64,000 bases of DNA from positions 372,001-436,000 of IMG/VR virus record IMGVR_UViG_3300049793_000366, one strand, 5' to 3'. Positions 13,723 to 61,350 of this stretch are shown here, in pieces. Both the position numbers and the translations under genes were made by a program. The notes under the pieces are model-generated. The model was given only the letters and a program-made list of their open reading frames with translations. It did no database searches and was not told the origin of the DNA. Position 1 is the stretch's first letter; each line of letters begins with the position of its first letter.

Positions 13723-14136
13723 ATGACATTAAAAGAGAAAATTGCCCAGGACTACATCGTTGCTTTTAAAGCAAGAGAGCCAAAGAAGAATACTTTAGGC
13801 TTCATTAAATCGGCTATCGATACTGCTGAGAAAAATGGTGGTAAATCAACAGATGAAGAAGTACTTGAAATCTTAATTAAGATGGAGAAAAACTTGAAAG
13901 ATGTTTTAGTGAATGAAGCTAAAGCTGGTGTATCATCTGATGCTACAAATGCTGAGATTGAAGTAATTCAATCTTATTTGCCTAAGAAATTATCAGAAGA
14001 TGAAATCAAGGCAGAAATTCAAAATGCTATCAATGGTGGTGCTAATAACATTGGTGCTATTATGGCTTTGTTTAAAGACAAACCAGTAGATAGAAAAGTA
14101 GTTTCAACTATTGCTAATTCAATGCTTGCTAAATAA
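13723..14136 (+). CDS. GatB/YqeY domain protein
   Basis: LKEKIAQDYIVAFKARE...EIEVIQSYLPKKLSEDEI...IGAIM. Confidence 0.85.
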   Translation: MTLKEKIAQDYIVAFKAREPKKNTLGFIKSAIDTAEKNGGKSTDEEVLEILIKMEKNLKDVLVNEAKAGVSSDATNAEIEVIQSYLPKKLSEDEIKAEIQNAINGGANNIGAIMALFKDKPVDRKVVSTIANSMLAK

Positions 14137-15911: not shown

Positions 15912-16103
15912 ATGAAAAACGGAGTAGTAAAATTCTTCAATGAAACTAAAGGTTTCGGCTTTATTAAAGCAGAAGATGGTCAAGAAATTTTTGTTCACGT
16001 AAGTGGATGTAAAGAAGAAATACAAGAAAACGACAATGTAGTTTTCGATGTACAAGAAGGAAAAAAAGGATTAAATGCGGTTAACGTAAAGTTAGCTGAC
16101 TAA
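15912..16103 (+). CDS. cspA: Cold-shock protein
   Basis: GVVKFFNETKGFGFI, IFVHVS, GKKGLNAVNV. Confidence 0.95.
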   Translation: MKNGVVKFFNETKGFGFIKAEDGQEIFVHVSGCKEEIQENDNVVFDVQEGKKGLNAVNVKLAD

Positions 16104-16116
16104 TATATACCTACCT

Positions 16117-16179
16117 ATGACTATTAAAAGAATTAAATTAGCTGATGATTGCCTAACCTGTCTAACTGTGACGGATTAG
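16117..16179 (+). CDS. Asp leader peptide MTIKRIKLADDCLTCLTVTD
   Basis: Short ORF after AATATATA, tandem GAT GAT codons, directly before a terminator and aspS. Confidence 0.75.
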   Translation: MTIKRIKLADDCLTCLTVTD

Positions 16180-16236
16180 TAATCTATTGACTATATAATT
16201 CGAAACCCAGTTAGACACGTTCTAACTGGGTTTTTT
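16159..16236 (+). promoter_or_regulatory. Attenuator (antiterminator/terminator) of aspS
   Basis: Terminator aaacccagttaga/tctaactgggttt + T tract (16203-16236); leader tgtctaactg (16159-16168) is the exact complement of cagttagaca (16208-16217). Confidence 0.8.
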
Positions 16237-16278
16237 ATTTGCACTAAAAATTATAAACTAAAAACAAAAACAATTATT

Positions 16279-17556
16279 ATGAAAAGAACAAACATCAATG
16301 AACTGAATGCCCATGTAGGTGAGACAGTTCTAATTAAAGGTTGGGTATCACAATTTAGAAAATTAAGTAAGATATCCTTTATTATTCTACGCGAGAGAAC
16401 AGGATATTGTCAAGTGATAGTACCAAAAGAAGTATTTTTCGAAACAATACATTCTGAATCAGTAGTAGAAATAGTTGGTACGGTTAAAGCTGAACCACAA
16501 TCTAAGTATAACGGTCTTGAGATTGTAGTAGAGAAGATAACTATTGTATCAAGCGCAGAAGTATTACCATTCCCAATCAGTAGAGAAGAAGGTGTACCAT
16601 TCAATACACTAAACACTTATCGACCATTGACACTGAGAAAAGAACAAGAGCGATGTATATTTAAAATACAGTCTGAAATTATTTGGGCATATAGAGAATA
16701 TCTTCGTTCACAAGGCTTCACTGAAATACAATCTACAAAACTATCTGCCGCTGGTTTAGAAGGTGGTTCAGAAATGTTTGAGATAAACTATTTTGGAGAG
16801 AAGATGTATCTAACACAAAGCCCGCAGTTCTATAAACAGATGATGGTTGGTGTATATGAACGAGTGTTTGAAGTTGGTAAAGTTTACAGAGCAGAAGGTT
16901 CTAATACAAACAAGCACTTAACAGAATTTGTTGGGTTTGAATTTGAAATGGGATTCATTGAATCAGTTGAAGAAGTAATGCAAATGGAAGAGAATGTACT
17001 TGAACACATATTCAATCATTTGAATGTAGTTTGTAAGTCTGAGCTATCACATTTATCAATTGAGTTGAAGTTTAATCCAATACCAAGAGTTACTTATTCA
17101 GAAGCTATTGAAATAATTAAACGTGAACATGGTATCACTTATGAGAAAGTAGGACTGAGTACCGAAGCTGAGAGATTGATTGGTGAATATATTCTGAAGA
17201 CACAAGGTTCAGAGTTTGTATTCATCACTAAATATCCATTATCAGAAAGACCATTCTATGCGATGCCATCACCAGAAGAAGGTATGTCTGAAACATTTGA
17301 ATTGCTTTATAAGGGGATGGAAATTACTTCTGGTGGTCAGCGCATTCATAACTATGAACAATTAGTTAAATCAATAGAAGCTAAGGGATTAAACCCAGAA
17401 GCATTTGAGAGCTACCTAATGGCATTTAAGTATGGTATGCCTACTCACGGAGGTATGGGTATCGGTGTAGAGCGAGTGCTTAAGCAAATGCTAAATTTGA
17501 ATACCGCAGAGGAAGCATCATTGATACCAAGAACTAAAGAGAGATACAGTCATTAA
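16279..17556 (+). CDS. aspS: Aspartyl-tRNA synthetase, short archaeal-type
   Basis: OB-fold N-terminus, QSPQFYKQ, YRAE, EITSGGQRIH, GMPTHGGMGIGVER. QSPQ favours AspRS over AsnRS. Confidence 0.88.
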   Translation: MKRTNINELNAHVGETVLIKGWVSQFRKLSKISFIILRERTGYCQVIVPKEVFFETIHSESVVEIVGTVKAEPQSKYNGLEIVVEKITIVSSAEVLPFPISREEGVPFNTLNTYRPLTLRKEQERCIFKIQSEIIWAYREYLRSQGFTEIQSTKLSAAGLEGGSEMFEINYFGEKMYLTQSPQFYKQMMVGVYERVFEVGKVYRAEGSNTNKHLTEFVGFEFEMGFIESVEEVMQMEENVLEHIFNHLNVVCKSELSHLSIELKFNPIPRVTYSEAIEIIKREHGITYEKVGLSTEAERLIGEYILKTQGSEFVFITKYPLSERPFYAMPSPEEGMSETFELLYKGMEITSGGQRIHNYEQLVKSIEAKGLNPEAFESYLMAFKYGMPTHGGMGIGVERVLKQMLNLNTAEEASLIPRTKERYSH

Positions 17557-19524: not shown

Positions 19525-19607
19525 TTTGCAAATTGAAAACTTTCACCTTACATTTGTATAAAATTAATAAGAAAAATAAAAAGGGAGCGAAAGCTTTATA
19601 ATATATA
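19525..19607 (+). promoter_or_regulatory. Dual promoter cassette (host-type promoter plus AATATATA)
   Basis: TTTG 19525, TACATTTG 19549-19556, AATATATA 19600-19607; near-identical copy at 47332-47414. Confidence 0.75.
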
Positions 19608-19612
19608 ACAAC

Positions 19613-19690
19613 ATGAAAACATTAATAAACATACAAGTTCAACCCGATCCGCAAGTGTCGTCTGCTGGCTGTATGTTTCATATGAGTTGA
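19613..19690 (+). CDS. Gln/Val/Pro/Asp leader peptide MKTLINIQVQPDPQVSSAGCMFHMS
   Basis: Short ORF between promoter and terminator; core QVQPDPQV. Confidence 0.75.
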   Translation: MKTLINIQVQPDPQVSSAGCMFHMS

Positions 19691-19714
19691 AAATAACTAT
19701 TTCAAATAATATCG

Positions 19715-19749
19715 AAAACCCTCAGTTAGCAATGACTGAGGGTTTTTTT
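19715..19749 (+). terminator. Attenuator terminator before the Asp/Pro tRNA-proS operon
   Basis: aaaaccctcagt/actgagggtttt + T tract; leader tgctggctg can pair with cagttagca. Confidence 0.8.
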
Positions 19750-19759
19750 ATGCCTAAAC

Positions 19760-19832
19760 GGAGCCATGGTTGAATGGTTACAATGCCACCCTGTCACGGT
19801 GAGCGATGCCGGTTCGAATCCGGTTGGTTCCG
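19760..19832 (+). tRNA. tRNA-Asp(GUC)
   Basis: Cloverleaf GGAGCCA/TGGTTCC, loop CTGTCAC, G73. Confidence 0.92.
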
Positions 19833-20813: not shown

Positions 20814-21916
20814 GATTATCAGAAACAAAAATTTATAATATGTCAAGAGTTGGGAAAGATATTCTCTCAACATCTGAGTTGCTTGAGAAAGCAGGCTACA
20901 TTAAACAAGTTCAATCAGGATTATTTGTTCAGATGAATTTAATGAAACGTGTAGTGAACAACATTGAACGAATTGTAAAAGAAGAACTTGAAAAAATAAG
21001 TTGCTTAGAGATTGGATTAAACCAATTACAGAGCGCAGAAATTTGGAAACAAACAGGAAGATACGAAACATACGGATCTGAAATGTTTAAGTTGAAAGAC
21101 CGTTCAGATAAAGAAATGGTATTCACTGGTACGAATGAAGAGCTTGTAACCTTAGTGGCTAAGAATTATGTGAAGTCATATAGAGATTTATCTTTTACAT
21201 TCTATCAGATAAATAATAAGTTCCGTGATGAGATTAGATGCAACACTGGATTGATTAGATGTAAAGAGTTCTCAATGATGGATGCGTATTCATTTCACGA
21301 ATCAAAAGAACACTTACAAGCTTACTATGATAAGATGAGAGAATGTTACGTTAGAATCTTTGACAGACTTGGTTTGAAATACAGAATAGAATCTACTGAC
21401 TCAGGTGAGATTGGTGGTTCAGTATCAGAAGAGTTTGTAGTAACAACAAGTGATGGTGAAATAGAAGTTGGTCACATCTTCCAATTAGATACAAAGTATT
21501 CATCTAAGATGGAAGCAAGATTTGATGATAGAGAAGGTAAGAGTCAAGACATTGTTATGGGTTGTTACGGAATAGGTATCACTCGATTAGCACAAGTGTT
21601 AGCTGATGTTGGTAGAAGTGGTAACAACTTTAACTTTAGTGATGAAGTATCTGCTTATAAGTATGGTGTTGTAATCGCGAATGTTAATGACGAGAAACAA
21701 AAAGAAATTGGAGAAAAGATATACAAAAATTTGGTAGCTCAAGGATTATCCGTATATTTGGATGACCGAAACATAAGAATAGGTGAAAAGCTAAATGAAA
21801 TAGATGCTCTCGGTATTGCGAATAAAATATTAGTAGGTAAAAACATTGAAGAAAATATTTACGAAAAGAAAAAACTTTCCAGTGAGAATTGGATAAAAGA
21901 AGAAATAACATTATAA
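20810..21916 (+). CDS. proS: Prolyl-tRNA synthetase lacking the INS editing domain
   Basis: FRDEIR..GLIRCKEF.MMDAYSF; GEIGGSVSEEF joins IEVGHIFQL almost directly; MGCYGIGITR; C-terminal anticodon-binding domain. Confidence 0.92.
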   Translation: MRLSETKIYNMSRVGKDILSTSELLEKAGYIKQVQSGLFVQMNLMKRVVNNIERIVKEELEKISCLEIGLNQLQSAEIWKQTGRYETYGSEMFKLKDRSDKEMVFTGTNEELVTLVAKNYVKSYRDLSFTFYQINNKFRDEIRCNTGLIRCKEFSMMDAYSFHESKEHLQAYYDKMRECYVRIFDRLGLKYRIESTDSGEIGGSVSEEFVVTTSDGEIEVGHIFQLDTKYSSKMEARFDDREGKSQDIVMGCYGIGITRLAQVLADVGRSGNNFNFSDEVSAYKYGVVIANVNDEKQKEIGEKIYKNLVAQGLSVYLDDRNIRIGEKLNEIDALGIANKILVGKNIEENIYEKKKLSSENWIKEEITL

Positions 21917-21927
21917 TATATACAGCT

Positions 21928-21999
21928 ATGAACAATTTAGTACAACAAGTCCAGCAACAACAAATCAATCTGATGATTGACTGGACTCGTATTGGCTAA
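21928..21999 (+). CDS. Gln leader peptide MNNLVQQVQQQQINLMIDWTRIG
   Basis: Six Gln codons (5 CAA, 1 CAG) ahead of a terminator, four tRNA-Gln genes and glnS. Confidence 0.88.
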   Translation: MNNLVQQVQQQQINLMIDWTRIG

Positions 22000-22022
22000 A
22001 ATGTAATTAGTTCCAAATTTCG

Positions 22023-22057
22023 AAAACCCGTTAATCTGTGTGATTAACGGGTTTTTT
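22023..22057 (+). terminator. Attenuator terminator of the Gln operon
   Basis: aaaacccgttaatc/gattaacgggtttt + T tract; leader gattgac pairs with gttaatc. Confidence 0.85.
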
Positions 22058-22070
22058 GTTTGCCTAAAAT

Positions 22071-22151
22071 TGTCTGGTGGTGAAATGGCAGCCACATCCG
22101 CCTTTGAAGCGGATGCCGAAAGGCGTGTAGGTTCGACCCCTACCCAGACAG
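22071..22151 (+). tRNA. tRNA-Gln(UUG) with a long variable arm (type II body)
   Basis: TGTCTGG/CCAGACA, G73, TCCGC-CTTTGAA-GCGGA, variable arm GCC-GAAA-GGC. Confidence 0.8.
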
Positions 22152-24544: not shown

Positions 24545-24601
24545 ATGAAACACATTAACTCAAATAACGTAGTCGTAGTCAACAGGAATCCCGTCTGTTA
24601 G
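24545..24601 (+). CDS. Val leader peptide MKHINSNNVVVVNRNPVC
   Basis: Four consecutive Val codons (GTA GTC GTA GTC) ahead of a terminator and valS. Confidence 0.88.
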   Translation: MKHINSNNVVVVNRNPVC

Positions 24602-24623
24602 GCTACGCTATATCTATTATACT

Positions 24624-24655
24624 AACCCATCAGACAATCTCTGATGGGTTTTTTT
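24624..24655 (+). terminator. Attenuator terminator of valS
   Basis: aacccatcag/ctgatgggtt + T tract; leader gtctg pairs with cagac. Confidence 0.82.
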
Positions 24656-24694
24656 ATACCAAAAAATTACTAAAAAATTAAAACTAAAAATATT

Positions 24695-26224
24695 ATGAAA
24701 ACGAAATACACACCCGAAATTGAAAATGAAATCAACCAAGAATGGTTAGAAAATAAAACATACAAATCAACACCTGATGAGAGAGAAGCATTCACTATCA
24801 TCATGCCACCACCAAACATCACTGGTATACTTCACCTTGGACACATCTTGAATAACACAATACAAGATATTTTCATTAGAAGAAAGAAACAACTTGGTTA
24901 CAACACTTGTTGGATTCCTGGTATCGACCATGCTTCAATCGCAACAGAAGCTAAAATCATTCACTGGTTGAAAGAACAGAACATCGAGAAGAATGATCTG
25001 ACTAAAGAACAATTTCTTGAGTATGCTTGGCAATGGAAAGATAAATATGGTAACATAATCATCGACCAACTTAAACGATGTGGCTTTGCTTGTGATTGGG
25101 ATAGACTTACATTCACAATGGATAAACATCACTCTGATAGAATCTATGAAATGTATGACAGACTTAAAGCTGGCAACATCATATATCGCGGTACTAAAAC
25201 AATGGCTTATGACCCATTAGCTAAAACATACTTATCAGACTCGGAAACGTTTGAGAAGAATGGTAAACTATTCTCTGAGAGAACAGGCGCTAAGATTGAA
25301 ATGAAAGACACTGAGCAGATATTTATCGATATGAATAAGATTGCTCAACCCGCACTTGATAGTATCGGAGAACGCATTAAAATGATTCCTGATACAGCAT
25401 TCCCATCTTATAAGAATTGGTTTGATAACTTACAAGATTGGTGTATCTCAAGACAGTTAACATGGGGTCACTCTATACCAGATGATGAAGGAACTTTTGA
25501 TACTTGGTTCTCTTCTTGGTTATGTGCTATCACAGCATTTAAATCACAAGAAGAAATAGATTACTATATGCCATCAGACTTCATCATTACTGGTCAAGAC
25601 ATCGCTTTCTTTTGGATTGCTAAGATGATAATGGCGAATGATTACTGGGATAAATCTATACCGTTTCATAACATCTACTTCACTGGTATTATGAGAGATA
25701 AAGACGGTAAGAAGTTTGCGAAGCAGTTTAATAATTCACCAGACATTATGAATTTGATGGAAGAGCATGGCGCTGACTCATTGCGATTCTCAACTATCAT
25801 TAACCATCACGCTGGTATGGATTCTAAATGGACTATGGATCAATTGTTACAGGGTAAAAGATTCTGTAATAAGATTTGGAATATCAACAAGCTAATGTCT
25901 TCGTGGCAACCATCTGATATAGAAATGTCAGACAAACAAAGAGAATCATTGAATACTTGGAAGATGCAGTTTGCTTCTGCTAAGAATAGCTACAAGCAAC
26001 TATTTGATGATGAGCTTAGATTCTCAGAAGCTTTGATATTAACCTACAATCTTATTTGGGAAGACTTTTCATCTGGGTTACTTGAAGCCATAAAGCCTGA
26101 ACAGGGCATTTGGCCAAATTTAAACCGTGAGCTGTATGATTGTTTAATGAGTGATTTCAGAGAATTGATGCTAATGTTGGAGCCATTTATGCCATTCATA
26201 AGCAATTATATGTTGAATAAGTAA
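24695..26224 (+). CDS. valS: Valyl-tRNA synthetase, 509 aa, CP1 editing domain deleted
   Basis: PPPNITGILHLGH, PGIDHASIAT, DWCISRQLTWGH, FDTWFSS; KMSKS equivalent is KFAKQ. Confidence 0.9.
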   Translation: MKTKYTPEIENEINQEWLENKTYKSTPDEREAFTIIMPPPNITGILHLGHILNNTIQDIFIRRKKQLGYNTCWIPGIDHASIATEAKIIHWLKEQNIEKNDLTKEQFLEYAWQWKDKYGNIIIDQLKRCGFACDWDRLTFTMDKHHSDRIYEMYDRLKAGNIIYRGTKTMAYDPLAKTYLSDSETFEKNGKLFSERTGAKIEMKDTEQIFIDMNKIAQPALDSIGERIKMIPDTAFPSYKNWFDNLQDWCISRQLTWGHSIPDDEGTFDTWFSSWLCAITAFKSQEEIDYYMPSDFIITGQDIAFFWIAKMIMANDYWDKSIPFHNIYFTGIMRDKDGKKFAKQFNNSPDIMNLMEEHGADSLRFSTIINHHAGMDSKWTMDQLLQGKRFCNKIWNINKLMSSWQPSDIEMSDKQRESLNTWKMQFASAKNSYKQLFDDELRFSEALILTYNLIWEDFSSGLLEAIKPEQGIWPNLNRELYDCLMSDFRELMLMLEPFMPFISNYMLNK

Positions 26225-35169: not shown

Positions 35170-35252
35170 TTTGGAAATTGAAAACTTTTAACCTTATCTT
35201 TGTATAAATAATAATCAAATACTCAAAAGAGAGAAAACAATTTTAATATATA
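35170..35252 (+). promoter_or_regulatory. Dual promoter cassette
   Basis: TTTG 35170, TATCTTTG 35195-35202, AATATATA 35245-35252. Confidence 0.75.
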
Positions 35253-35256
35253 AGTC

Positions 35257-35361
35257 ATGTTAGTTATCAGTTCACATAAACATTTTAGTAAATCTAATAA
35301 GTGGTTTAGCCACTCTGGTTCGTGCTATGGCGTTTGTGTAAACTCTACTACAATGATGTAA
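35257..35361 (+). CDS. His/Lys/Phe/Trp/Ser leader peptide MLVISSHKHFSKSNKWFSHSGSCYGVCVNSTTMM
   Basis: Core HKHFSKSNKWFSHS ahead of a terminator and the His/Lys/Trp/Phe/Ser tRNA array. Confidence 0.8.
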   Translation: MLVISSHKHFSKSNKWFSHSGSCYGVCVNSTTMM

Positions 35362-35383
35362 AGAATTTAAATCACAATACTCG

Positions 35384-35416
35384 AAGCTCGAACCGTAAAA
35401 AGTTCGAGCTTTTTTT
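35384..35416 (+). terminator. Attenuator terminator
   Basis: aagctcgaac/gttcgagctt + T tract; leader tggttcgtgct pairs with agctcgaaccg. Confidence 0.82.
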
Positions 35417-35441
35417 GTGCCTAAATTTTAAAAATTTATAT

Positions 35442-35514
35442 GGTGATTATCGTCCAATGGTTAGGACATACGTTTGTGAAGCGTAGGATATGGGTTCGAG
35501 TCCCATTAGTCACA
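35442..35514 (+). tRNA. tRNA-His(GUG)
   Basis: G-1, GTGATTA/TAGTCAC, TACGT-TTGTGAA-GCGTA; A73 rather than C73. Confidence 0.85.
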
Positions 35515-35697: not shown

Positions 35698-35771
35698 TGA
35701 GGGGTAGCTCAGTGGTAAGAGCGCCGGGACGGAAAACCCGGAGGTCGTTGGTTCGAATCTAACCCCCTCTA
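35698..35771 (+). tRNA. Initiator-like tRNA body with an 8-nt anticodon loop ACGGAAAA
   Basis: U1-U72 mismatch, GAGGGG/CCCCTC, CCGGG/CCCGG stem, AGGTC variable loop. Confidence 0.6.
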
Positions 35772-35779
35772 CAAAGAAT

Positions 35780-40102: not shown

Positions 40103-40145
40103 TTTGCATAATAGACAAAACATAACTATATTTGCTTAATATATA
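40103..40145 (+). promoter_or_regulatory. Dual promoter
   Basis: TTTG 40103, TATATTTG 40127-40134, AATATATA 40138-40145. Confidence 0.75.
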
Positions 40146-40150
40146 ACAAT

Positions 40151-40219
40151 ATGAAAACAACAATGACAATAACAATTTCTCGCTCGCGTTCATCGCGTTC
40201 ACTACCTCTGGTGGTCTGA
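40151..40219 (+). CDS. Ser/Arg leader peptide MKTTMTITISRSRSSRSLPLVV
   Basis: SRSRSSRS core; all Ser codons TCN, all Arg codons CGY. Confidence 0.85.
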   Translation: MKTTMTITISRSRSSRSLPLVV

Positions 40220-40246
40220 GATTGTATTGTCTAATAAATAATACTT

Positions 40247-40278
40247 AACCCTTGGACTTCACTGTTCAAGGGTTTTTT
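40247..40278 (+). terminator. Attenuator terminator
   Basis: aacccttgga/ttcaagggtt + T tract; leader-end ggtctgag pairs with cttggact. Confidence 0.8.
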
Positions 40279-40292
40279 GTTATGTGTAAATT

Positions 40293-40379
40293 GGAAGAGT
40301 AAAGCGTAATTGGTATCGCCCCAGTCTTGAAAACTGGTATCGGGAAACTGGTGTGCAGGTTCGAGTCCTGTCTCTTCCG
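40293..40379 (+). tRNA. tRNA-Ser(UGA)
   Basis: GGAAGAG/CTCTTCC, CCAGT-CTTGAAA-ACTGG, long variable arm. Confidence 0.92.
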
Positions 40380-43055: not shown

Positions 43056-43124
43056 ATGAAAACATTAAACATCAATACTCATTTTCACTTTCACTTCGAA
43101 AACCTCGAACTGGGAGTCCATTGA
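43056..43124 (+). CDS. His/Phe leader peptide MKTLNINTHFHFHFENLELGVH
   Basis: HFHFHF directly before a terminator, hisS and pheS. Confidence 0.9.
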   Translation: MKTLNINTHFHFHFENLELGVH

Positions 43125-43151
43125 TATTGATATAACTATATAATCATTATG

Positions 43152-43179
43152 AAGCCCAGACGAGAATCTGGGCTTTTTT
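43152..43179 (+). terminator. Attenuator terminator of hisS-pheS
   Basis: aagcccaga/tctgggctt + T tract; leader ctcgaactggg pairs with cccagacgag. Confidence 0.85.
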
Positions 43180-43216
43180 ATTTGCAAAAATTTAAACAAA
43201 ATAAAACAAAGAAATC

Positions 43217-43852
43217 ATGGAAATTAAATTAGAATCAACTTACAAAGGAACAAGAATACTATTCGCTGAAACTGCGAAAACAAAAAGAACAATCATTAAC
43301 AAGATGATTGAAATACTTGAATCATATGGCTATCAAGAAATGATGATACCAATTATTCAAAAGCAAGATACTTTTAAATCTAAAGTAGGTGCTGAAAACC
43401 AAAAGATGATGTACACCTTCAAAGATATGGGTGACAGAGATTTGTGTTTAGCACCAGAGTATACCGCGGTTATTCAACAACTTGCTAAAGAAAAGTTTAA
43501 ATTCAACAAAGATGTTAAGCTATTTTATGTAGCTGAGTGTTTCAGAGGTGAGAACACACAAGCTGGTCGATTTAGACAGTTCACTCAATTTGGTGTTGAG
43601 GTGATAAACCCAAGAGAAGACTACTCTGATGAAATGTTAGAGATAGCAAAAAAGTTAATTGAAATATGTACTGATAACTATGAAGTGAATACTGACGCGA
43701 CCAGAGGCTTAGACTACTATAAAGGTGGTAAGGGCTTCGAGATTGGTTGCCCAGAGTTGGGATCCTCTAAGCAAGTATGTGGTGGTGGTTCTTATGAAGG
43801 TGGTATCGGATTCGCTATCGGTGTTGACCGAATACTAATACTTAAAAAATAA
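43217..43852 (+). CDS. hisS: Histidyl-tRNA synthetase, catalytic domain only (211 aa)
   Basis: LCLAPEYT, FRGENTQAGRFRQFTQFGVE, RGLDYY, GGGSY, GFAIGVDR, then stop. Confidence 0.88.
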   Translation: MEIKLESTYKGTRILFAETAKTKRTIINKMIEILESYGYQEMMIPIIQKQDTFKSKVGAENQKMMYTFKDMGDRDLCLAPEYTAVIQQLAKEKFKFNKDVKLFYVAECFRGENTQAGRFRQFTQFGVEVINPREDYSDEMLEIAKKLIEICTDNYEVNTDATRGLDYYKGGKGFEIGCPELGSSKQVCGGGSYEGGIGFAIGVDRILILKK

Positions 43853-47331: not shown

Positions 47332-47414
47332 CTTGCAAATCGAAAACTTTCACCTTACATTTGTATAAAATTAATCAGAAATAGAAAAAGGGAGCATTAG
47401 CTTCTTAATATATA
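47332..47414 (+). promoter_or_regulatory. Dual promoter cassette
   Basis: TACATTTG 47356-47363, AATATATA 47407-47414; near copy of 19525-19607. Confidence 0.75.
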
Positions 47415-47436
47415 AAAAAGATAAAAAACTAAAACA

Positions 47437-47532
47437 ATGAACACTTTAATCTACATAGGGTATATAGCGGAAGGCGGTTATGAAGCGGGGAGCTTCGTGA
47501 ATGGCTTGGTTTTACCTATGCGTAAAGTGTGA
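47437..47532 (+). CDS. Tyr/Ile/Gly/Ala/Glu leader peptide MNTLIYIGYIAEGGYEAGSFVNGLVLPMRKV
   Basis: Core YIGYIAEGGYEAG with two ATA codons. Confidence 0.85.
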   Translation: MNTLIYIGYIAEGGYEAGSFVNGLVLPMRKV

Positions 47533-47558
47533 TGATATAAACATACTTAACAAATTCG

Positions 47559-47590
47559 AAACCCAGTCATTCAAATGACTGGGTTTTTTT
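47559..47590 (+). terminator. Attenuator terminator
   Basis: aaacccagtcatt/aatgactgggttt + T tract; leader tgaatggcttggttt (47498-47512) pairs with aaacccagtcattca. Confidence 0.85.
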
Positions 47591-47600
47591 ATGCCTTAAT

Positions 47601-47673
47601 GGTCCTATCGGCAAGTTGGTTAAGCCGCCACCCTTTCAAGGTGGAGTCACGGGTTCAAGTCCCGTTGGGACTA
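47601..47673 (+). tRNA. tRNA-Glu(UUC)
   Basis: CCACC-CTTTCAA-GGTGG. Confidence 0.92.
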
Positions 47674-60518: not shown

Positions 60519-61272
60519 TTGGGCAGTATAGTGTCCTACACAAATCTTCGGGTTTGTGTGAAAATAAAGCTGGTAACAGTCTATAAAGCAAACGTAGAGT
60601 TTGCGACTTCTTCACGGGAGTTTAACTATAAAATACTTAGTATGTCTTTGATGGACGAATGTTCAATGAGATATCATCATCCAACTATGGTGATTGCGTC
60701 AGAAATGATTACAAGAAAGGTAGGGTATTATGTGCGAAATGTCCAAACATTAGTGCGTGTGCTATCTGATTAAGTTATACAACGTATAGTTTATATTCGC
60801 AAGGGTATTTATTATACATGGGCGACTGAAGCAGACGTGAGCTGGAAACTCACAGAAGGGCGTTTAGTATTTTGTTCTCAAAAGGAACGAAGCTATACCA
60901 CACAGGCGTCCTTCATACAAATAGTTGTTATCTAACATGATTTTGAAATATCAAAAAAGCAAAATCTGTGTGGCGCTGGAGTCGAAAGGTCTCTAATTCC
61001 ATCCGTTGCGAAACGAAGATGGAGTCTAATATCCCGCAAGGATATGGATTTAGCTAAGAAAAATCTAGTGGGCGCAACCCTTAGTCAGTTCGCAAGACTG
61101 AATAGACAGAGTAGCAGTTGAGTAGACAAACTGGTCAAACAGTTCTAGCGATACGAGTGATTACCGTAAGGAATCGAGACTGACAGAATACTTATCGCAA
61201 GGTGAGTGGATAATGAGAGAACCAATAATGCTCAGAAAGATTTGTCGACCAAAGCTATAATCTCAAGCTTTT
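60519..61272 (+). ncRNA. Large ornate ncRNA, GOLLD-like (about 750 nt)
   Basis: Five CGCAA-loop hairpins, UUCG/GCGA/GAAA loops, long-range helices (GAAGGGCG/CGTCCTTC, CACACAG/CTGTGTG); tRNA-flanked phage context; family call is from memory. Confidence 0.6.
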
Positions 61273-61276
61273 TTAC

Positions 61277-61350
61277 GGCGTGTTCGTCTATCGGAAGGAC
61301 GCTACCCCATTTCAGGGTAGAAACGTATGGTTCGAATCCTGCACACGCTA
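61277..61350 (+). tRNA. Glu-like tRNA-like RNA, near copy of 59987-60060
   Basis: Identical from GGAAGGAC through the T arm; acceptor GGCGTGT/ACACGCT co-varies. Confidence 0.6.

What the first reader, a model, noticed from the sequence alone, without database searches (positions are those of the whole stretch)
16117..16236. Asp attenuator with a perfect 10-nt antiterminator
Leader MTIKRIKLADDCLTCLTVTD has only two tandem GAT codons. However, tgtctaactg (16159-16168) is the exact complement of cagttagaca (16208-16217) in the terminator before aspS. It sits directly behind cspA and uses the AATATATA motif.
Basis: partly seen in the sequence, partly recalled or inferred. Interest (0 to 1): 0.7.

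Follow-up and report, generated by a model that had tools for sequence, protein, structure and literature searches.

The report
Phage aspartate-sensing attenuator before aspS
A giant soil phage appears to control its own aspartyl-tRNA synthetase gene with a classic "stalled ribosome" switch: a 20-codon mini-gene with two aspartate codons plus a terminator. The same design sits in front of its other synthetase genes and its tRNA gene clusters, and I found no report of this in a phage.

Summary
ORF 16117-16179 encodes MTIKRIKLADDCLTCLTVTD. Segment 16159-16168 is the exact complement of 16208-16217, which lies in a strong intrinsic terminator (16202-16236) 42 nt before a non-discriminating AspRS gene. 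A complement this long arises in 0.07% of shuffles.

The window comes from a 508-kb huge phage. Its relatives are the 635-642 kb "Mahaphage" genomes, whose predicted host is Bacteroidetes.

Fourteen other phages, with AspRS 60-95% identical, carry the same leader, whatever gene lies upstream. Thirteen keep tandem Asp codons. The CTRACTG segment starts 11-13 nt after them (7 in one). The terminator arm covaries with it.

A conserved hairpin (P1) holds the Asp codons at its base, CTRACTG near its apex and the stop codon in its 3' strand.

Folding the nascent RNA with a ribosome parked on GAT GAT gives the antiterminator in 12 of 15 sequences. Parking it on the stop codon abolishes it in most.

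In the same genome, IIII, LLLL, VVVV and HFHFHF leaders precede ileS, leuS, valS and hisS. Leaders rich in the cognate residues precede six tRNA arrays.

Verdict: a genuine ribosome-mediated Asp attenuator and a new variant of a known mechanism. No expression data exist.

The parts
15912..16103 (+). Cold-shock-domain protein gene (csp). It has no terminator of its own before the leader, so in this phage it is probably co-transcribed with it.
   Evidence: PF00313 CSD, E 5.5e-18. Relatives have unrelated genes at this position.
16102..16109 (+). AATATATA motif, 7 nt before the leader ATG. It is a genome-wide start-proximal motif, probably a promoter -10-like or start-context element.
   Evidence: 25 copies against 12.6 expected. 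In 11 of its 17 + strand copies an ATG follows within 0-7 nt, at ordinary genes as well as leaders.
16117..16179 (+). Leader ORF, 20 codons: MTIKRIKLADDCLTCLTVTD, stop TAG followed in frame by TAA.
   Evidence: Homologous 17-20 codon ORFs occur in 14 other phages.
16144..16149 (+). Regulatory codons GAT GAT (Asp-Asp), paired at the base of hairpin P1.
   Evidence: Tandem Asp codons in 14 of the 15 aligned phage sequences, this window included (three in L009, GAC GAT in L095).
16130..16201 (+). Hairpin P1 (anti-antiterminator; core 16143-16189). Its 5' strand is the Asp codons plus the antiterminator segment. Its 3' strand contains the stop codon.
   Evidence: MFE fold. The consensus P1 in 15 phages has 22 pairs, 88.5% of cells paired and 6 pairs with changes on both sides.
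16159..16168 (+). Antiterminator 5' strand (segment A: tgtctaactg, core CTAACTG). The core starts 12 nt after the second Asp codon and ends 8 nt before the stop codon.
   Evidence: Exact 10-nt complement of 16208-16217. The core is conserved in three different reading frames. 98.1% of cells pair with the terminator arm.
16208..16217 (+). Partner of segment A: the upper part of the terminator 5' arm plus the first two loop bases (cagttagaca).
16202..16236 (+). Intrinsic terminator: 14-pair stem, 5-nt loop, T6 run at 16231-16236.
   Evidence: It covaries in 15 phages (97.3% of cells paired, 4 pairs with double changes, 0/500 shuffles) and is the RNAalifold consensus.
16237..16278 (+). A-rich 42-nt spacer to the aspS start. 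In relatives the spacer is 22-60 nt, where the aspS start is correctly called.
   Evidence: No sigma-70-like site was listed here, though that scan does not cover Bacteroidetes promoter types.
16279..17556 (+). aspS: 425-aa archaeal-type non-discriminating aspartyl-tRNA synthetase, the regulated gene.
   Evidence: NF003483, 493 bits (cutoff 353); TIGR00458, 379 bits (cutoff 368). PF00152 and PF01336.

Best explanation
The region 16117-16236 is a ribosome-mediated (leader-peptide) transcription attenuator. It sets how many transcripts reach the phage's own AspRS gene according to how fast ribosomes decode Asp codons.

Default state. The RNA folds into hairpin P1. P1 locks the CTAACTG segment (A) against the stop-codon region, so the terminator forms and transcription ends at 16236.

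Asp-tRNA plentiful. A ribosome that translates the leader without delay runs to the TAG, where it physically covers segment A. Transcription again terminates.

Asp-tRNA scarce. The ribosome stalls on GAT GAT at the base of P1 and melts its lower stem. Segment A starts 12 nt beyond the second Asp codon, just past the ribosome's leading edge, and remains exposed. As soon as the terminator's 5' arm emerges, A pairs with it (10 bp here, enclosing a small hairpin). The terminator cannot form and RNA polymerase reads into aspS.

Shown: the sequence elements, their conservation and covariation, and the thermodynamic preference of each state.
Inferred: translation of the leader, stalling, the kinetics, and the in vivo outcome.
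For: 1. The anatomy is as described.
2. The 10-nt complement is unlikely by chance: p about 7e-4, and it is one of only two outliers among 77 terminators in the genome.
3. Fourteen other phages, with AspRS 60-95% identical, have a 17-20 codon leader in which ATG is in frame with the Asp codons. The gap from the Asp codons to CTRACTG is 11-13 nt in 14 of the 15 aligned sequences, this window included. The stop codon lies inside CTRACTG or at most 13 nt after it. The total length from ATG to the T run is 112-123 nt. The upstream gene differs between phages.
4. CTRACTG is read in all three frames (CTA ACT G; A CTR ACT G; GAC TAA CTG). It is therefore conserved as RNA, not as peptide.
5. The A:terminator-arm helix is 98.1% paired. 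One position runs A-U (8), G-U (4), G-C (3), and the terminator's 3' arm changes in step.
6. P1 plus terminator: 90.5% of cells paired, 12 pairs with double changes, and 0/500 shuffles reach the observed score.
7. Nascent-RNA partition functions. With a ribosome on Asp-Asp, the A:C pairing probability is 0.98-1.00 in 12 of 15 sequences. In the window it is 0.99, with -18.9 kcal/mol against -6.9 when the arm is kept free. With a ribosome on the stop codon it is 0.01 or less in 10 of 15.
8. Same genome: the IIII leader precedes IleRS, LLLL LeuRS, VVVV ValRS and HFHFHF HisRS. Each has a terminator, and each has a complementary segment 12-15 nt after the codon run. The leader/target cognate match beats all 200,000 permutations.
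9. Another phage (L091) has a VVV leader before valS, directly after aspS.
10. The terminator lies 22-60 nt from the aspS ATG, which leaves little room for a separate promoter.
Against: - There are no transcript, ribosome-profiling or reporter data. Only soil-metagenome DNA runs were listed.
- At equilibrium the full-length RNA always prefers the terminator, so the switch must be kinetic.
- Segment A pairs with the upper part of the 5' arm and leaves the CCC at the stem base free. The 3' arm could therefore nucleate there and displace A.
- In the window itself, the antiterminator is already favoured without a ribosome in the truncated RNA (0.82). P1 must win by forming first.
- Covariation specific to the A:C helix is modest: one covarying pair, and 41/500 shuffles do as well.
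- Two sequences give only 0.55 in the stalled state. L096 has D-S and no A:C pairing. L003 has a different leader with a single Asp.
- The footprint size used for masking is an assumption.
- A third Asp codon directly before the stop has no clear role in the model.
Confidence: 0.8

Rival explanations
1. The same attenuator hardware, but sensing something other than aspartate supply. It would report codon-specific decoding capacity in the infected cell: loss of host tRNA(Asp), for example to host anticodon nucleases, or general host shut-off. Its purpose would be to top up phage tRNA and synthetase only when needed.
For: The element is phage-borne. The same design also gates six tRNA arrays, whose leaders are built from the cognate codons. 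That fits sensing of tRNA availability better than sensing of amino-acid pools. Three phage tRNA-Asp genes lie 3.5 kb downstream. In 9 of 15 relatives the codon before Asp-Asp is Asn (N-D-D), and the enzyme is the type that also charges tRNA(Asn).
Against: A stalled ribosome cannot tell uncharged tRNA from missing tRNA, so the sequence alone cannot separate this from the main explanation. The link to host defences is inference only.
Confidence: 0.3
2. A translation-independent RNA switch. The conserved leader RNA (P1 and flanks) would bind a factor such as AspRS itself, tRNA(Asp) or a phage protein, and that binding would set terminator against antiterminator. On this reading the ORF is incidental.
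For: Much of the leader is conserved at the nucleotide level beyond the Asp codons, for example RCAGATTAG and GTGATAG-ATAA-CTATTAC. P1 is a well-supported structure. Autoregulation of synthetase genes by their products is known (E. coli thrS; established knowledge).
Against: ATG, reading frame and Asp codons are maintained despite in-frame length changes (7-11 codons before Asp-Asp). The stop codon always lies where a terminating ribosome covers segment A. Four other synthetase leaders in the same genome differ in sequence but each carries a run of its own cognate codons. No T-box or any other Rfam family matches.
Confidence: 0.07
3. An ordinary transcription-unit boundary. The hairpin simply terminates csp (and, in relatives, other upstream genes). 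The 20-codon ORF and the 10-nt complement have no regulatory role, and aspS has its own promoter.
For: csp has no other terminator. AT-rich phage genomes are full of short ORFs. AATATATA-type motifs could hide a promoter in the A-rich spacer.
Against: The ORF, the Asp codons, the complement and their spacing are conserved in 15 phages with different upstream genes. The complement is a statistical outlier. The cognate leader pattern across 11 loci has a permutation p below 5e-6. The spacer to aspS is only 22-60 nt.
Confidence: 0.04
4. The short ORF encodes a functional micropeptide (consensus M-K-x-I-x-K-L-N-D-D-x-Y-L-L-T-D-C-x-A-D) that acts in trans.
For: The N-terminal K-L-N-D-D block and the C-terminal A-D are well conserved.
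Against: The C-terminal half is read in three different frames and ends at different points (17-20 aa), while the underlying nucleotides stay constant. The conserved nucleotides are explained by P1 and the antiterminator.
Confidence: 0.03

Closest known systems
E. coli pheST attenuator (pheM leader peptide)
   Same: A leader-peptide attenuator that controls an aminoacyl-tRNA synthetase gene through codons for the cognate amino acid and an intrinsic terminator just upstream of the gene (established knowledge).
   Different: It senses Phe, not Asp, and is bacterial, not phage. There is no sequence similarity. Here the strand that becomes the antiterminator lies in the same (5') strand of the first hairpin as the regulatory codons, 12 nt downstream of them, rather than in a separate segment 2.
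E. coli trp operon attenuator (trpL; Rfam Trp_leader)
   Same: It has only two tandem regulatory codons and mutually exclusive 1:2 / 2:3 / 3:4-type hairpins. A ribosome on the stop codon masks the antiterminator strand.
   Different: It controls a biosynthetic operon, not a synthetase. Rfam leader models give no hit here. The topology differs: A pairs either with the adjacent downstream strand B (apex of P1) or with the terminator arm.
T-box riboswitch (controls aspS and hisS in Firmicutes)
   Same: The same regulatory goal: more synthetase when the cognate tRNA is poorly charged, achieved through a terminator/antiterminator choice.
   Different: T-boxes bind uncharged tRNA directly and need no translation. 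No T-box match was found at the gathering threshold anywhere in the window, or at E<=10 in 16050-16300. This leader is about 120 nt and contains a conserved ORF.
His leader peptides before hisS/hisZ paralogues in bacilli (Naville & Gautheret 2010, PMC2965389)
   Same: A predicted leader-peptide attenuator upstream of a synthetase gene outside the Proteobacteria, found by searching for premature terminators.
   Different: It is cellular and His-specific. That study does not mention phages or aspS.
Huge-phage translation gene sets (Al-Shayeb et al. 2020, PMC7162821)
   Same: The same kind of genome. The closest database relatives, LR756502 and LR745206, are 635-642 kb uncultured-phage records of that size class, with many tRNAs and up to 15 synthetases and a predicted Bacteroidetes host.
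   Different: That paper describes the gene content only. Its text contains no 'attenuat' or 'leader'.

Membership tests
Ribosome-mediated (leader-peptide) transcription attenuator | A short ORF with a start codon upstream of, and close to, a terminator in the 5' region of the regulated gene | tested here: met
   20-codon ORF at 16117-16179. The terminator starts 23 nt after the stop codon. aspS starts 42 nt after the T run.
Ribosome-mediated (leader-peptide) transcription attenuator | The leader carries tandem or enriched codons for the amino acid tied to the regulated gene | tested here: met
   GAT GAT precedes an AspRS gene. Tandem Asp codons are conserved in 14 of the 15 aligned phage sequences. 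Cognate runs also precede ileS, leuS, valS and hisS in the same genome.
Ribosome-mediated (leader-peptide) transcription attenuator | An intrinsic terminator between the leader and the gene | tested here: met
   14-pair stem plus T6. It covaries in 15 sequences.
Ribosome-mediated (leader-peptide) transcription attenuator | An antiterminator helix mutually exclusive with the terminator | tested here: met
   16159-16168 pairs with 16208-17 (10 bp). 98.1% of cells are paired across 15 sequences, with an A-U / G-U / G-C series at one pair.
Ribosome-mediated (leader-peptide) transcription attenuator | An upstream hairpin that contains the regulatory codons and sequesters the antiterminator strand (a 1:2 equivalent) | tested here: met
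   P1 has 22 consensus pairs, 88.5% paired, and 6 pairs with double changes. The second GAT is at its base.
Ribosome-mediated (leader-peptide) transcription attenuator | Ribosome position decides the fold: a stall at the regulatory codons gives the antiterminator, and a ribosome at the stop codon gives the terminator | tested here: inconclusive
   Only modelled. Masked partition functions give 0.98-1.00 (stalled) in 12 of 15 sequences and 0.01 or less (at the stop) in 10 of 15. The footprint and the kinetics are assumed.
Ribosome-mediated (leader-peptide) transcription attenuator | The leader is translated, and read-through rises when the charged cognate tRNA is limiting | not testable with these tools
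   No RNA runs were listed for this DNA.
Rfam amino-acid leader families (His_leader, Leu_leader, Thr_leader, Trp_leader and others) | A match to the family covariance model | tested here: not met
   No such hit at the gathering threshold in the window or at E<=10 in 16050-16300. The best hit there is an unrelated sRNA model at 23 bits against a cutoff of 50.
T-box riboswitch | A match to the T-box model (specifier loop, T-box sequence, antiterminator bulge) | tested here: not met
   No T-box hit. The leader is only about 120 nt.

The most novel reading that the evidence does not exclude
The Asp leader is one module of a phage-encoded, genome-wide attenuation regulon. In this huge phage and its relatives, every translation 'spare part' is gated by its own leader peptide built from the matching codons. 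At least five aminoacyl-tRNA synthetase genes and six tRNA gene arrays are covered. The phage would read out, codon by codon, which decoding capacities are failing in the infected cell, and would transcribe only the tRNAs and synthetases that repair them. I found no description, in the literature I could search, of leader-peptide attenuation of tRNA genes or of any such system in a virus.
Probability: 0.6. Interest if true: 0.9.

Novelty: new variant of a known kind. Interest (0 to 1): 0.8.

Why it matters
Huge phages carry dozens of tRNAs and up to 15 synthetases, but how and when they deploy them is unknown. This locus suggests an answer: classic ribosome-stalling attenuators, rebuilt in a phage, make each synthetase gene respond to the decoding of its own codons. 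The tRNA arrays appear to work the same way.

That would be:
- the first Asp-specific leader-peptide attenuator;
- the first attenuator regulon described in a virus;
- if the tRNA-array leaders work the same way, the first case of tRNA genes controlled by leader peptides.

It also provides a compact set of orthogonal codon-specific sensors (about 120 nt each). And it offers a handle on whether phage translation genes serve codon-usage compensation, host shut-off, or escape from tRNA-cleaving defences.

Tried and rejected
- **Expression evidence.** No RNA runs were listed. Only four soil or rhizosphere DNA runs hold the sequence.
- **Rfam.** The gathering scan of the window and an E<=10 scan of 16050-16300 returned only tRNAs, GOLLD and sub-threshold chance hits.
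- **RNAalifold.** On the 15-sequence alignment it predicted only the terminator. P1 had to be derived from the single-sequence folds, so its pair counts lean towards that structure.
- **Small hairpin H2 (GTGATAG-ATAA-CTATTAC).** 87% of cells paired with weak covariation (16/500 on cells paired). I keep it only as the hairpin enclosed by the antiterminator.
- **A:B hairpin on its own.** 92% paired, with one covarying pair. I treat it as the apex of P1, not as a separate element.
- **DNA pattern scans for more copies.** Three scans returned only chance matches, in GC-rich or coding DNA with no terminator: two of IMG/VR (1 and 5 stretches) and one of GTDB genomes (49 stretches).
- **More distant AspRS relatives.** L004, L005, L006, L008, L010, L097 and L099 lack the leader. 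L003 has a different short ORF with a single Asp. L096 has D-S and has lost the complement.
- **tRNA mimicry.** I considered an anticodon-loop mimic (UGUC in the window) and a T-box-like UGGN. Neither is conserved in the relatives.
- **Literature.** Eight full-text searches found no report of phage synthetase or tRNA attenuators. The library does not cover subscription journals.

Full report
**1. What is in the sequence.**

The window is part of a single 507,910-bp contig, at 372001-436000. It holds 39 tRNA genes and a GOLLD RNA. Its closest database relatives are uncultured phages of 642 and 635 kb, LR756502 and LR745206. Al-Shayeb et al. place all genomes above 634 kb in the Mahaphage clade, with predicted Bacteroidetes hosts (PMC7162821). 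The DNA is held by soil-metagenome runs.

- A 20-codon ORF (16117-16179) encodes MTIKRIKLADDCLTCLTVTD, with GAT GAT at 16144-16149.
- tgtctaactg (16159-16168) is the exact complement of cagttagaca (16208-16217).
- That partner lies inside a 14-pair hairpin followed by T6 (16202-16236).
- Upstream is a cold-shock-domain gene (15912-16103).
- Downstream, 42 nt after the T run, is a 425-aa archaeal-type non-discriminating AspRS (NF003483, 493 bits against a cutoff of 353).

A perfect complement of 10 nt or more arose in 0.07% of 20,000 shuffles of the 98 nt upstream. Among 77 terminator-like hairpins in the genome the usual longest upstream complement is 4-5 nt. Only this site and one other exceed 7 nt.

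**2. The element is conserved in related phages, independently of csp.**

I collected relatives of the AspRS gene from four sources: annotated phage records, IMG/VR, JGI metagenomes and a 5.8-billion-protein collection.

Fourteen further contigs, with AspRS 60-95% identical, carry a homologous leader directly before aspS. The peptides are:
- MKTILKLKDDRTKLPNCVD
- MRKIIKLKDDRYLWTDCLAD
- MKRIFKLNDDCYLWTDCLAD
- MKKIFKLNDDCYLWTDCLAD
- MKKVIKLNDDSYLLTDCIAD
- MIVIKLNDDSYLLADCFAD
- MKRLKLNDDRYLLTDCKAD
- MKNIRLNDDRFLLTNCKADW
- MKMFKLNDDRCLLTNCLADW
- MREIMKLNDDRYFRLTV
- MIRIFRVDDDRCLLTNCGTD
- MKRVKLYRKPRDDWYFD
- MKKIMKLNDDTRTNCVSH
- MKRILKLVDSCYLITELSD, a degenerate copy

The gene upstream differs between contigs (YqeY-like, another synthetase, hypothetical proteins, tRNAs), so the csp neighbour is incidental.

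Several features are constant across the family.
- ATG is in frame with the tandem Asp codons, despite 7-11 codons before them.
- The CTRACTG segment starts 11-13 nt after the last Asp codon in 14 of the 15 aligned sequences, this window included (7 nt in L098).
- The stop codon lies inside CTRACTG or at most 13 nt after it.
- The length from ATG to the end of the T run is 112-123 nt.
- The terminator lies 22-60 nt before the aspS ATG.

More distant AspRS relatives (59% identity or less, plus several at 68-77%) lack the element.

**3. Evidence that the conserved parts act as RNA.**

CTRACTG is read in all three frames: CTA ACT G in the window and L007, A CTR ACT G in most, and GAC TAA CTG in L095, where it contains the stop codon. 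It is therefore not conserved as peptide.

It stays complementary to the terminator's 5' arm in 98.1% of cells. The one variable pair runs A-U (8), G-U (4), G-C (3). Where the arm has C (CCCAGTCAG), both CTGACTG upstream and the 3' arm carry the matching G. On its own this covariation is modest (41/500 shuffles do as well). The terminator itself covaries strongly (0/500).

Its 5' strand begins with the second Asp codon and ends with CTRACTG. Its 3' strand begins with RCAGATTAG, which contains the stop codon, and runs into the post-stop region. The consensus has 22 pairs, with 88.5% of cells paired and 6 pairs changed on both sides. For P1 plus terminator, no shuffle in 500 reaches the observed score, and slid controls pair at 46% or less. 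Because the structure was derived from these same sequences, the counts lean towards it.

**4. How it most likely works.**

I folded the nascent RNA up to the terminator loop, before the 3' arm exists, with about 28 nt masked for a ribosome.

*Ribosome with the second Asp codon in its A site.* The probability that CTRACTG pairs with the terminator arm is 0.98-1.00 in 12 of 15 sequences. It is 0.55 in two and 0 in the degenerate L096. In the window it is 0.99, with -18.9 kcal/mol against -6.9 when the arm is kept free.

*Ribosome on the stop codon.* The probability is 0.01 or less in 10 of 15 sequences.

*No ribosome.* The probability varies from 0.00 to 1.00, and the full-length RNA always ends as P1 plus terminator.

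The picture is the classical one.
- P1 sequesters the antiterminator strand.
- A ribosome stalled on Asp-Asp melts the base of P1 and leaves that strand exposed just beyond its leading edge. The strand then captures the terminator arm, enclosing a small hairpin.
- A ribosome that reaches the stop codon covers the strand.

The topology differs from trp. The antiterminator strand lies in the same strand of P1 as the regulatory codons, and its alternative partner (B) lies between it and the terminator.

Translation, stalling and kinetics are inferred. The weak points are these:
- The antiterminator leaves the CCC base of the terminator stem free.
- In the window, P1 does not beat the antiterminator at equilibrium in the truncated RNA (0.82).
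- The third Asp codon, just before the stop, has no role in the model.

**5. Context that turns a plausible reading into a strong one.**

A blind scan of the genome for [short ORF + hairpin/T run + ORF] found four more cognate leaders. NCBIfam confirmed the downstream genes.

| Leader peptide | Codon run | Downstream gene |
|---|---|---|
| MNFNSIIIIRKSTPWYKPIG | IIII | IleRS |
| MITTMNTNLLLLADS | LLLL | LeuRS |
| MKHINSNNVVVVNRNPVC | VVVV | ValRS (window 24546-24695) |
| MKTLNINTHFHFHFENLELGVH | HFHFHF | HisRS (window 43057-43217) |

With a ribosome on the last codon of the run, each nascent RNA pairs its terminator arm with a segment that starts 12-15 nt after the run.

In another phage (L091), an M K L T Q N I S V V V A N V leader and a terminator precede valS, right after aspS.

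Six tRNA arrays are also preceded by a short ORF plus a strong terminator. Five lie in the window, and each of these also has an AATATATA motif upstream of the ORF. The ORFs are built from the amino acids of the tRNAs that follow.

| Leader core | tRNAs that follow |
|---|---|
| QQVQQQQ | four tRNA-Gln |
| SRSRSSRS | Ser, Arg, Ser, Ser, Arg, Ser |
| HKHFSKSNKWFSH | His, Lys, Trp, Phe, His, Phe |
| IYIGYIAEGGYEAG | Glu x3, Tyr x2, Gly x3, Ile, Ala x2 |
| PDP | Asp x3, Glu, Pro x2 |
| TLTVNMNLNNTMTTVVNITL | Asn, Thr, Leu, Arg, Asn, Ile, Leu, Val, Thr, Met |

Across all 11 leader/target pairs, the cognate match exceeds every one of 200,000 permutations.

**6. The AATATATA motif.**

The motif is over-represented, with 25 copies against 12.6 expected. 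In 11 of its 17 + strand copies an ATG follows within 0-7 nt, at ordinary genes as well as leaders.

In the relatives its place is taken by TATATTTG followed by 4-5 nt and then ATG. That matches the Bacteroidetes -7 box TAnnTTTG (established knowledge). By inference it is a promoter or start-context element, and the leaders may be leaderless or nearly leaderless mRNAs. It is not specific to attenuators.

**7. Comparison with what is known, and novelty.**

Functionally the closest case is the E. coli pheST attenuator, a synthetase gene controlled by cognate leader codons. In having only two regulatory codons it resembles trpL. In purpose it parallels the T-boxes that control aspS and hisS in Firmicutes.

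It is not a member of any Rfam leader family or of the T-box family. Pattern scans found no copy in the species-representative bacterial and archaeal genomes of GTDB or elsewhere in IMG/VR.

Full-text searches found no description of leader-peptide attenuators in phages, for aspS, or for tRNA genes. The huge-phage paper mentions neither attenuation nor leaders. This search covers open-access papers only.

I therefore class it as a new variant of a known kind of system. The mechanism class is textbook. What is new is the amino acid, the carrier (a virus), the helix topology and, above all, its apparent use as a genome-wide regulon that includes tRNA arrays.

**8. Verdict.**

Confidence that this is a ribosome-mediated attenuator of aspS that responds to decoding of Asp codons: about 0.8. 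Interest: 0.8. The decisive experiments are ordinary reporter, mutation and transcript-mapping tests.

Noticed in passing
window 19600-19760, 21915-22071, 35245-35443, 40138-40293, 47407-47601; genome C1 319889-320075: Six tRNA arrays are each preceded by a short ORF rich in exactly the amino acids of the tRNAs that follow (for example QQVQQQQ before four tRNA-Gln, SRSRSSRS before Ser/Arg tRNAs), then a strong terminator. In the five window arrays the ORF follows an AATATATA motif and the terminator is followed by a T-rich ...GCCTAAA/GCCTTAA or GTGTAAA-type motif. These look like leader-peptide attenuators gating tRNA genes, which I have not seen described.
   Followed up: partly
genome C1 51619-51775 and 127969-128103; window 24546-24695 and 43057-43217: Cognate leader peptides with terminators sit before four other synthetase genes: IIII before IleRS, LLLL before LeuRS, VVVV before ValRS, HFHFHF before HisRS. 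Each has a segment complementary to its terminator arm 12-15 nt after the codon run.
   Followed up: partly
window 24695-26221, 43217-43849; genome C1 128103-129365: Several phage synthetases are unusually short. ValRS is 509 aa and matches only the N- and C-terminal parts of the 860-aa model. LeuRS is 421 aa. HisRS is 211 aa and matches only the first ~146 positions. They may lack editing domains or be split genes.
   Followed up: no
window 60855-61350: A full-length GOLLD RNA (232 bits, model positions 1-416 of 416) is followed 8 nt later by a tRNA-like gene (61277-61350).
   Followed up: no
window 35698-35772; genome C1 121630-121702: ARAGORN calls a tRNA with a four-base anticodon (ggaa), which implies an 8-nt anticodon loop. 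It also calls a lone tRNA with anticodon CTA (labelled Pyl), i.e. a possible amber suppressor. Most Asp leaders end in TAG followed in frame by a second stop. No recoding was assumed here.
   Followed up: no
window 13723-14136; L002 about 2516-2915: A YqeY/GatB-like gene lies near the non-discriminating AspRS, and in LR745206 it is directly upstream of the Asp leader. In 9 of 15 leaders the codon before Asp-Asp is Asn (N-D-D). This would fit an enzyme that also charges tRNA(Asn).
   Followed up: no
window, 17 + strand copies of AATATATA (e.g. 26223, 27933, 44953, 51794, 63401): AATATATA lies 0-7 nt before the ATG of many ordinary genes. Relatives use TATATTTG (a Bacteroidetes-type -7 box) at the same place. 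This suggests promoters that give leaderless or near-leaderless mRNAs.
   Followed up: partly
L003 1375-1500 (IMGVR_UViG_3300006484_002299): A phage with 77% identical AspRS has a different leader (MKTINTQDQLYLIH, one Asp) and an unrelated terminator (CCCTGTTCAA...) directly after tRNA genes. This is either a replaced or a decaying attenuator.
   Followed up: no
L091 1917-2058: In another phage, aspS is followed by a Val leader (MKLTQNISVVVANVFRCW), a terminator and valS, and is preceded by another class I synthetase gene. This forms a cluster of attenuator-gated synthetase genes.
   Followed up: partly
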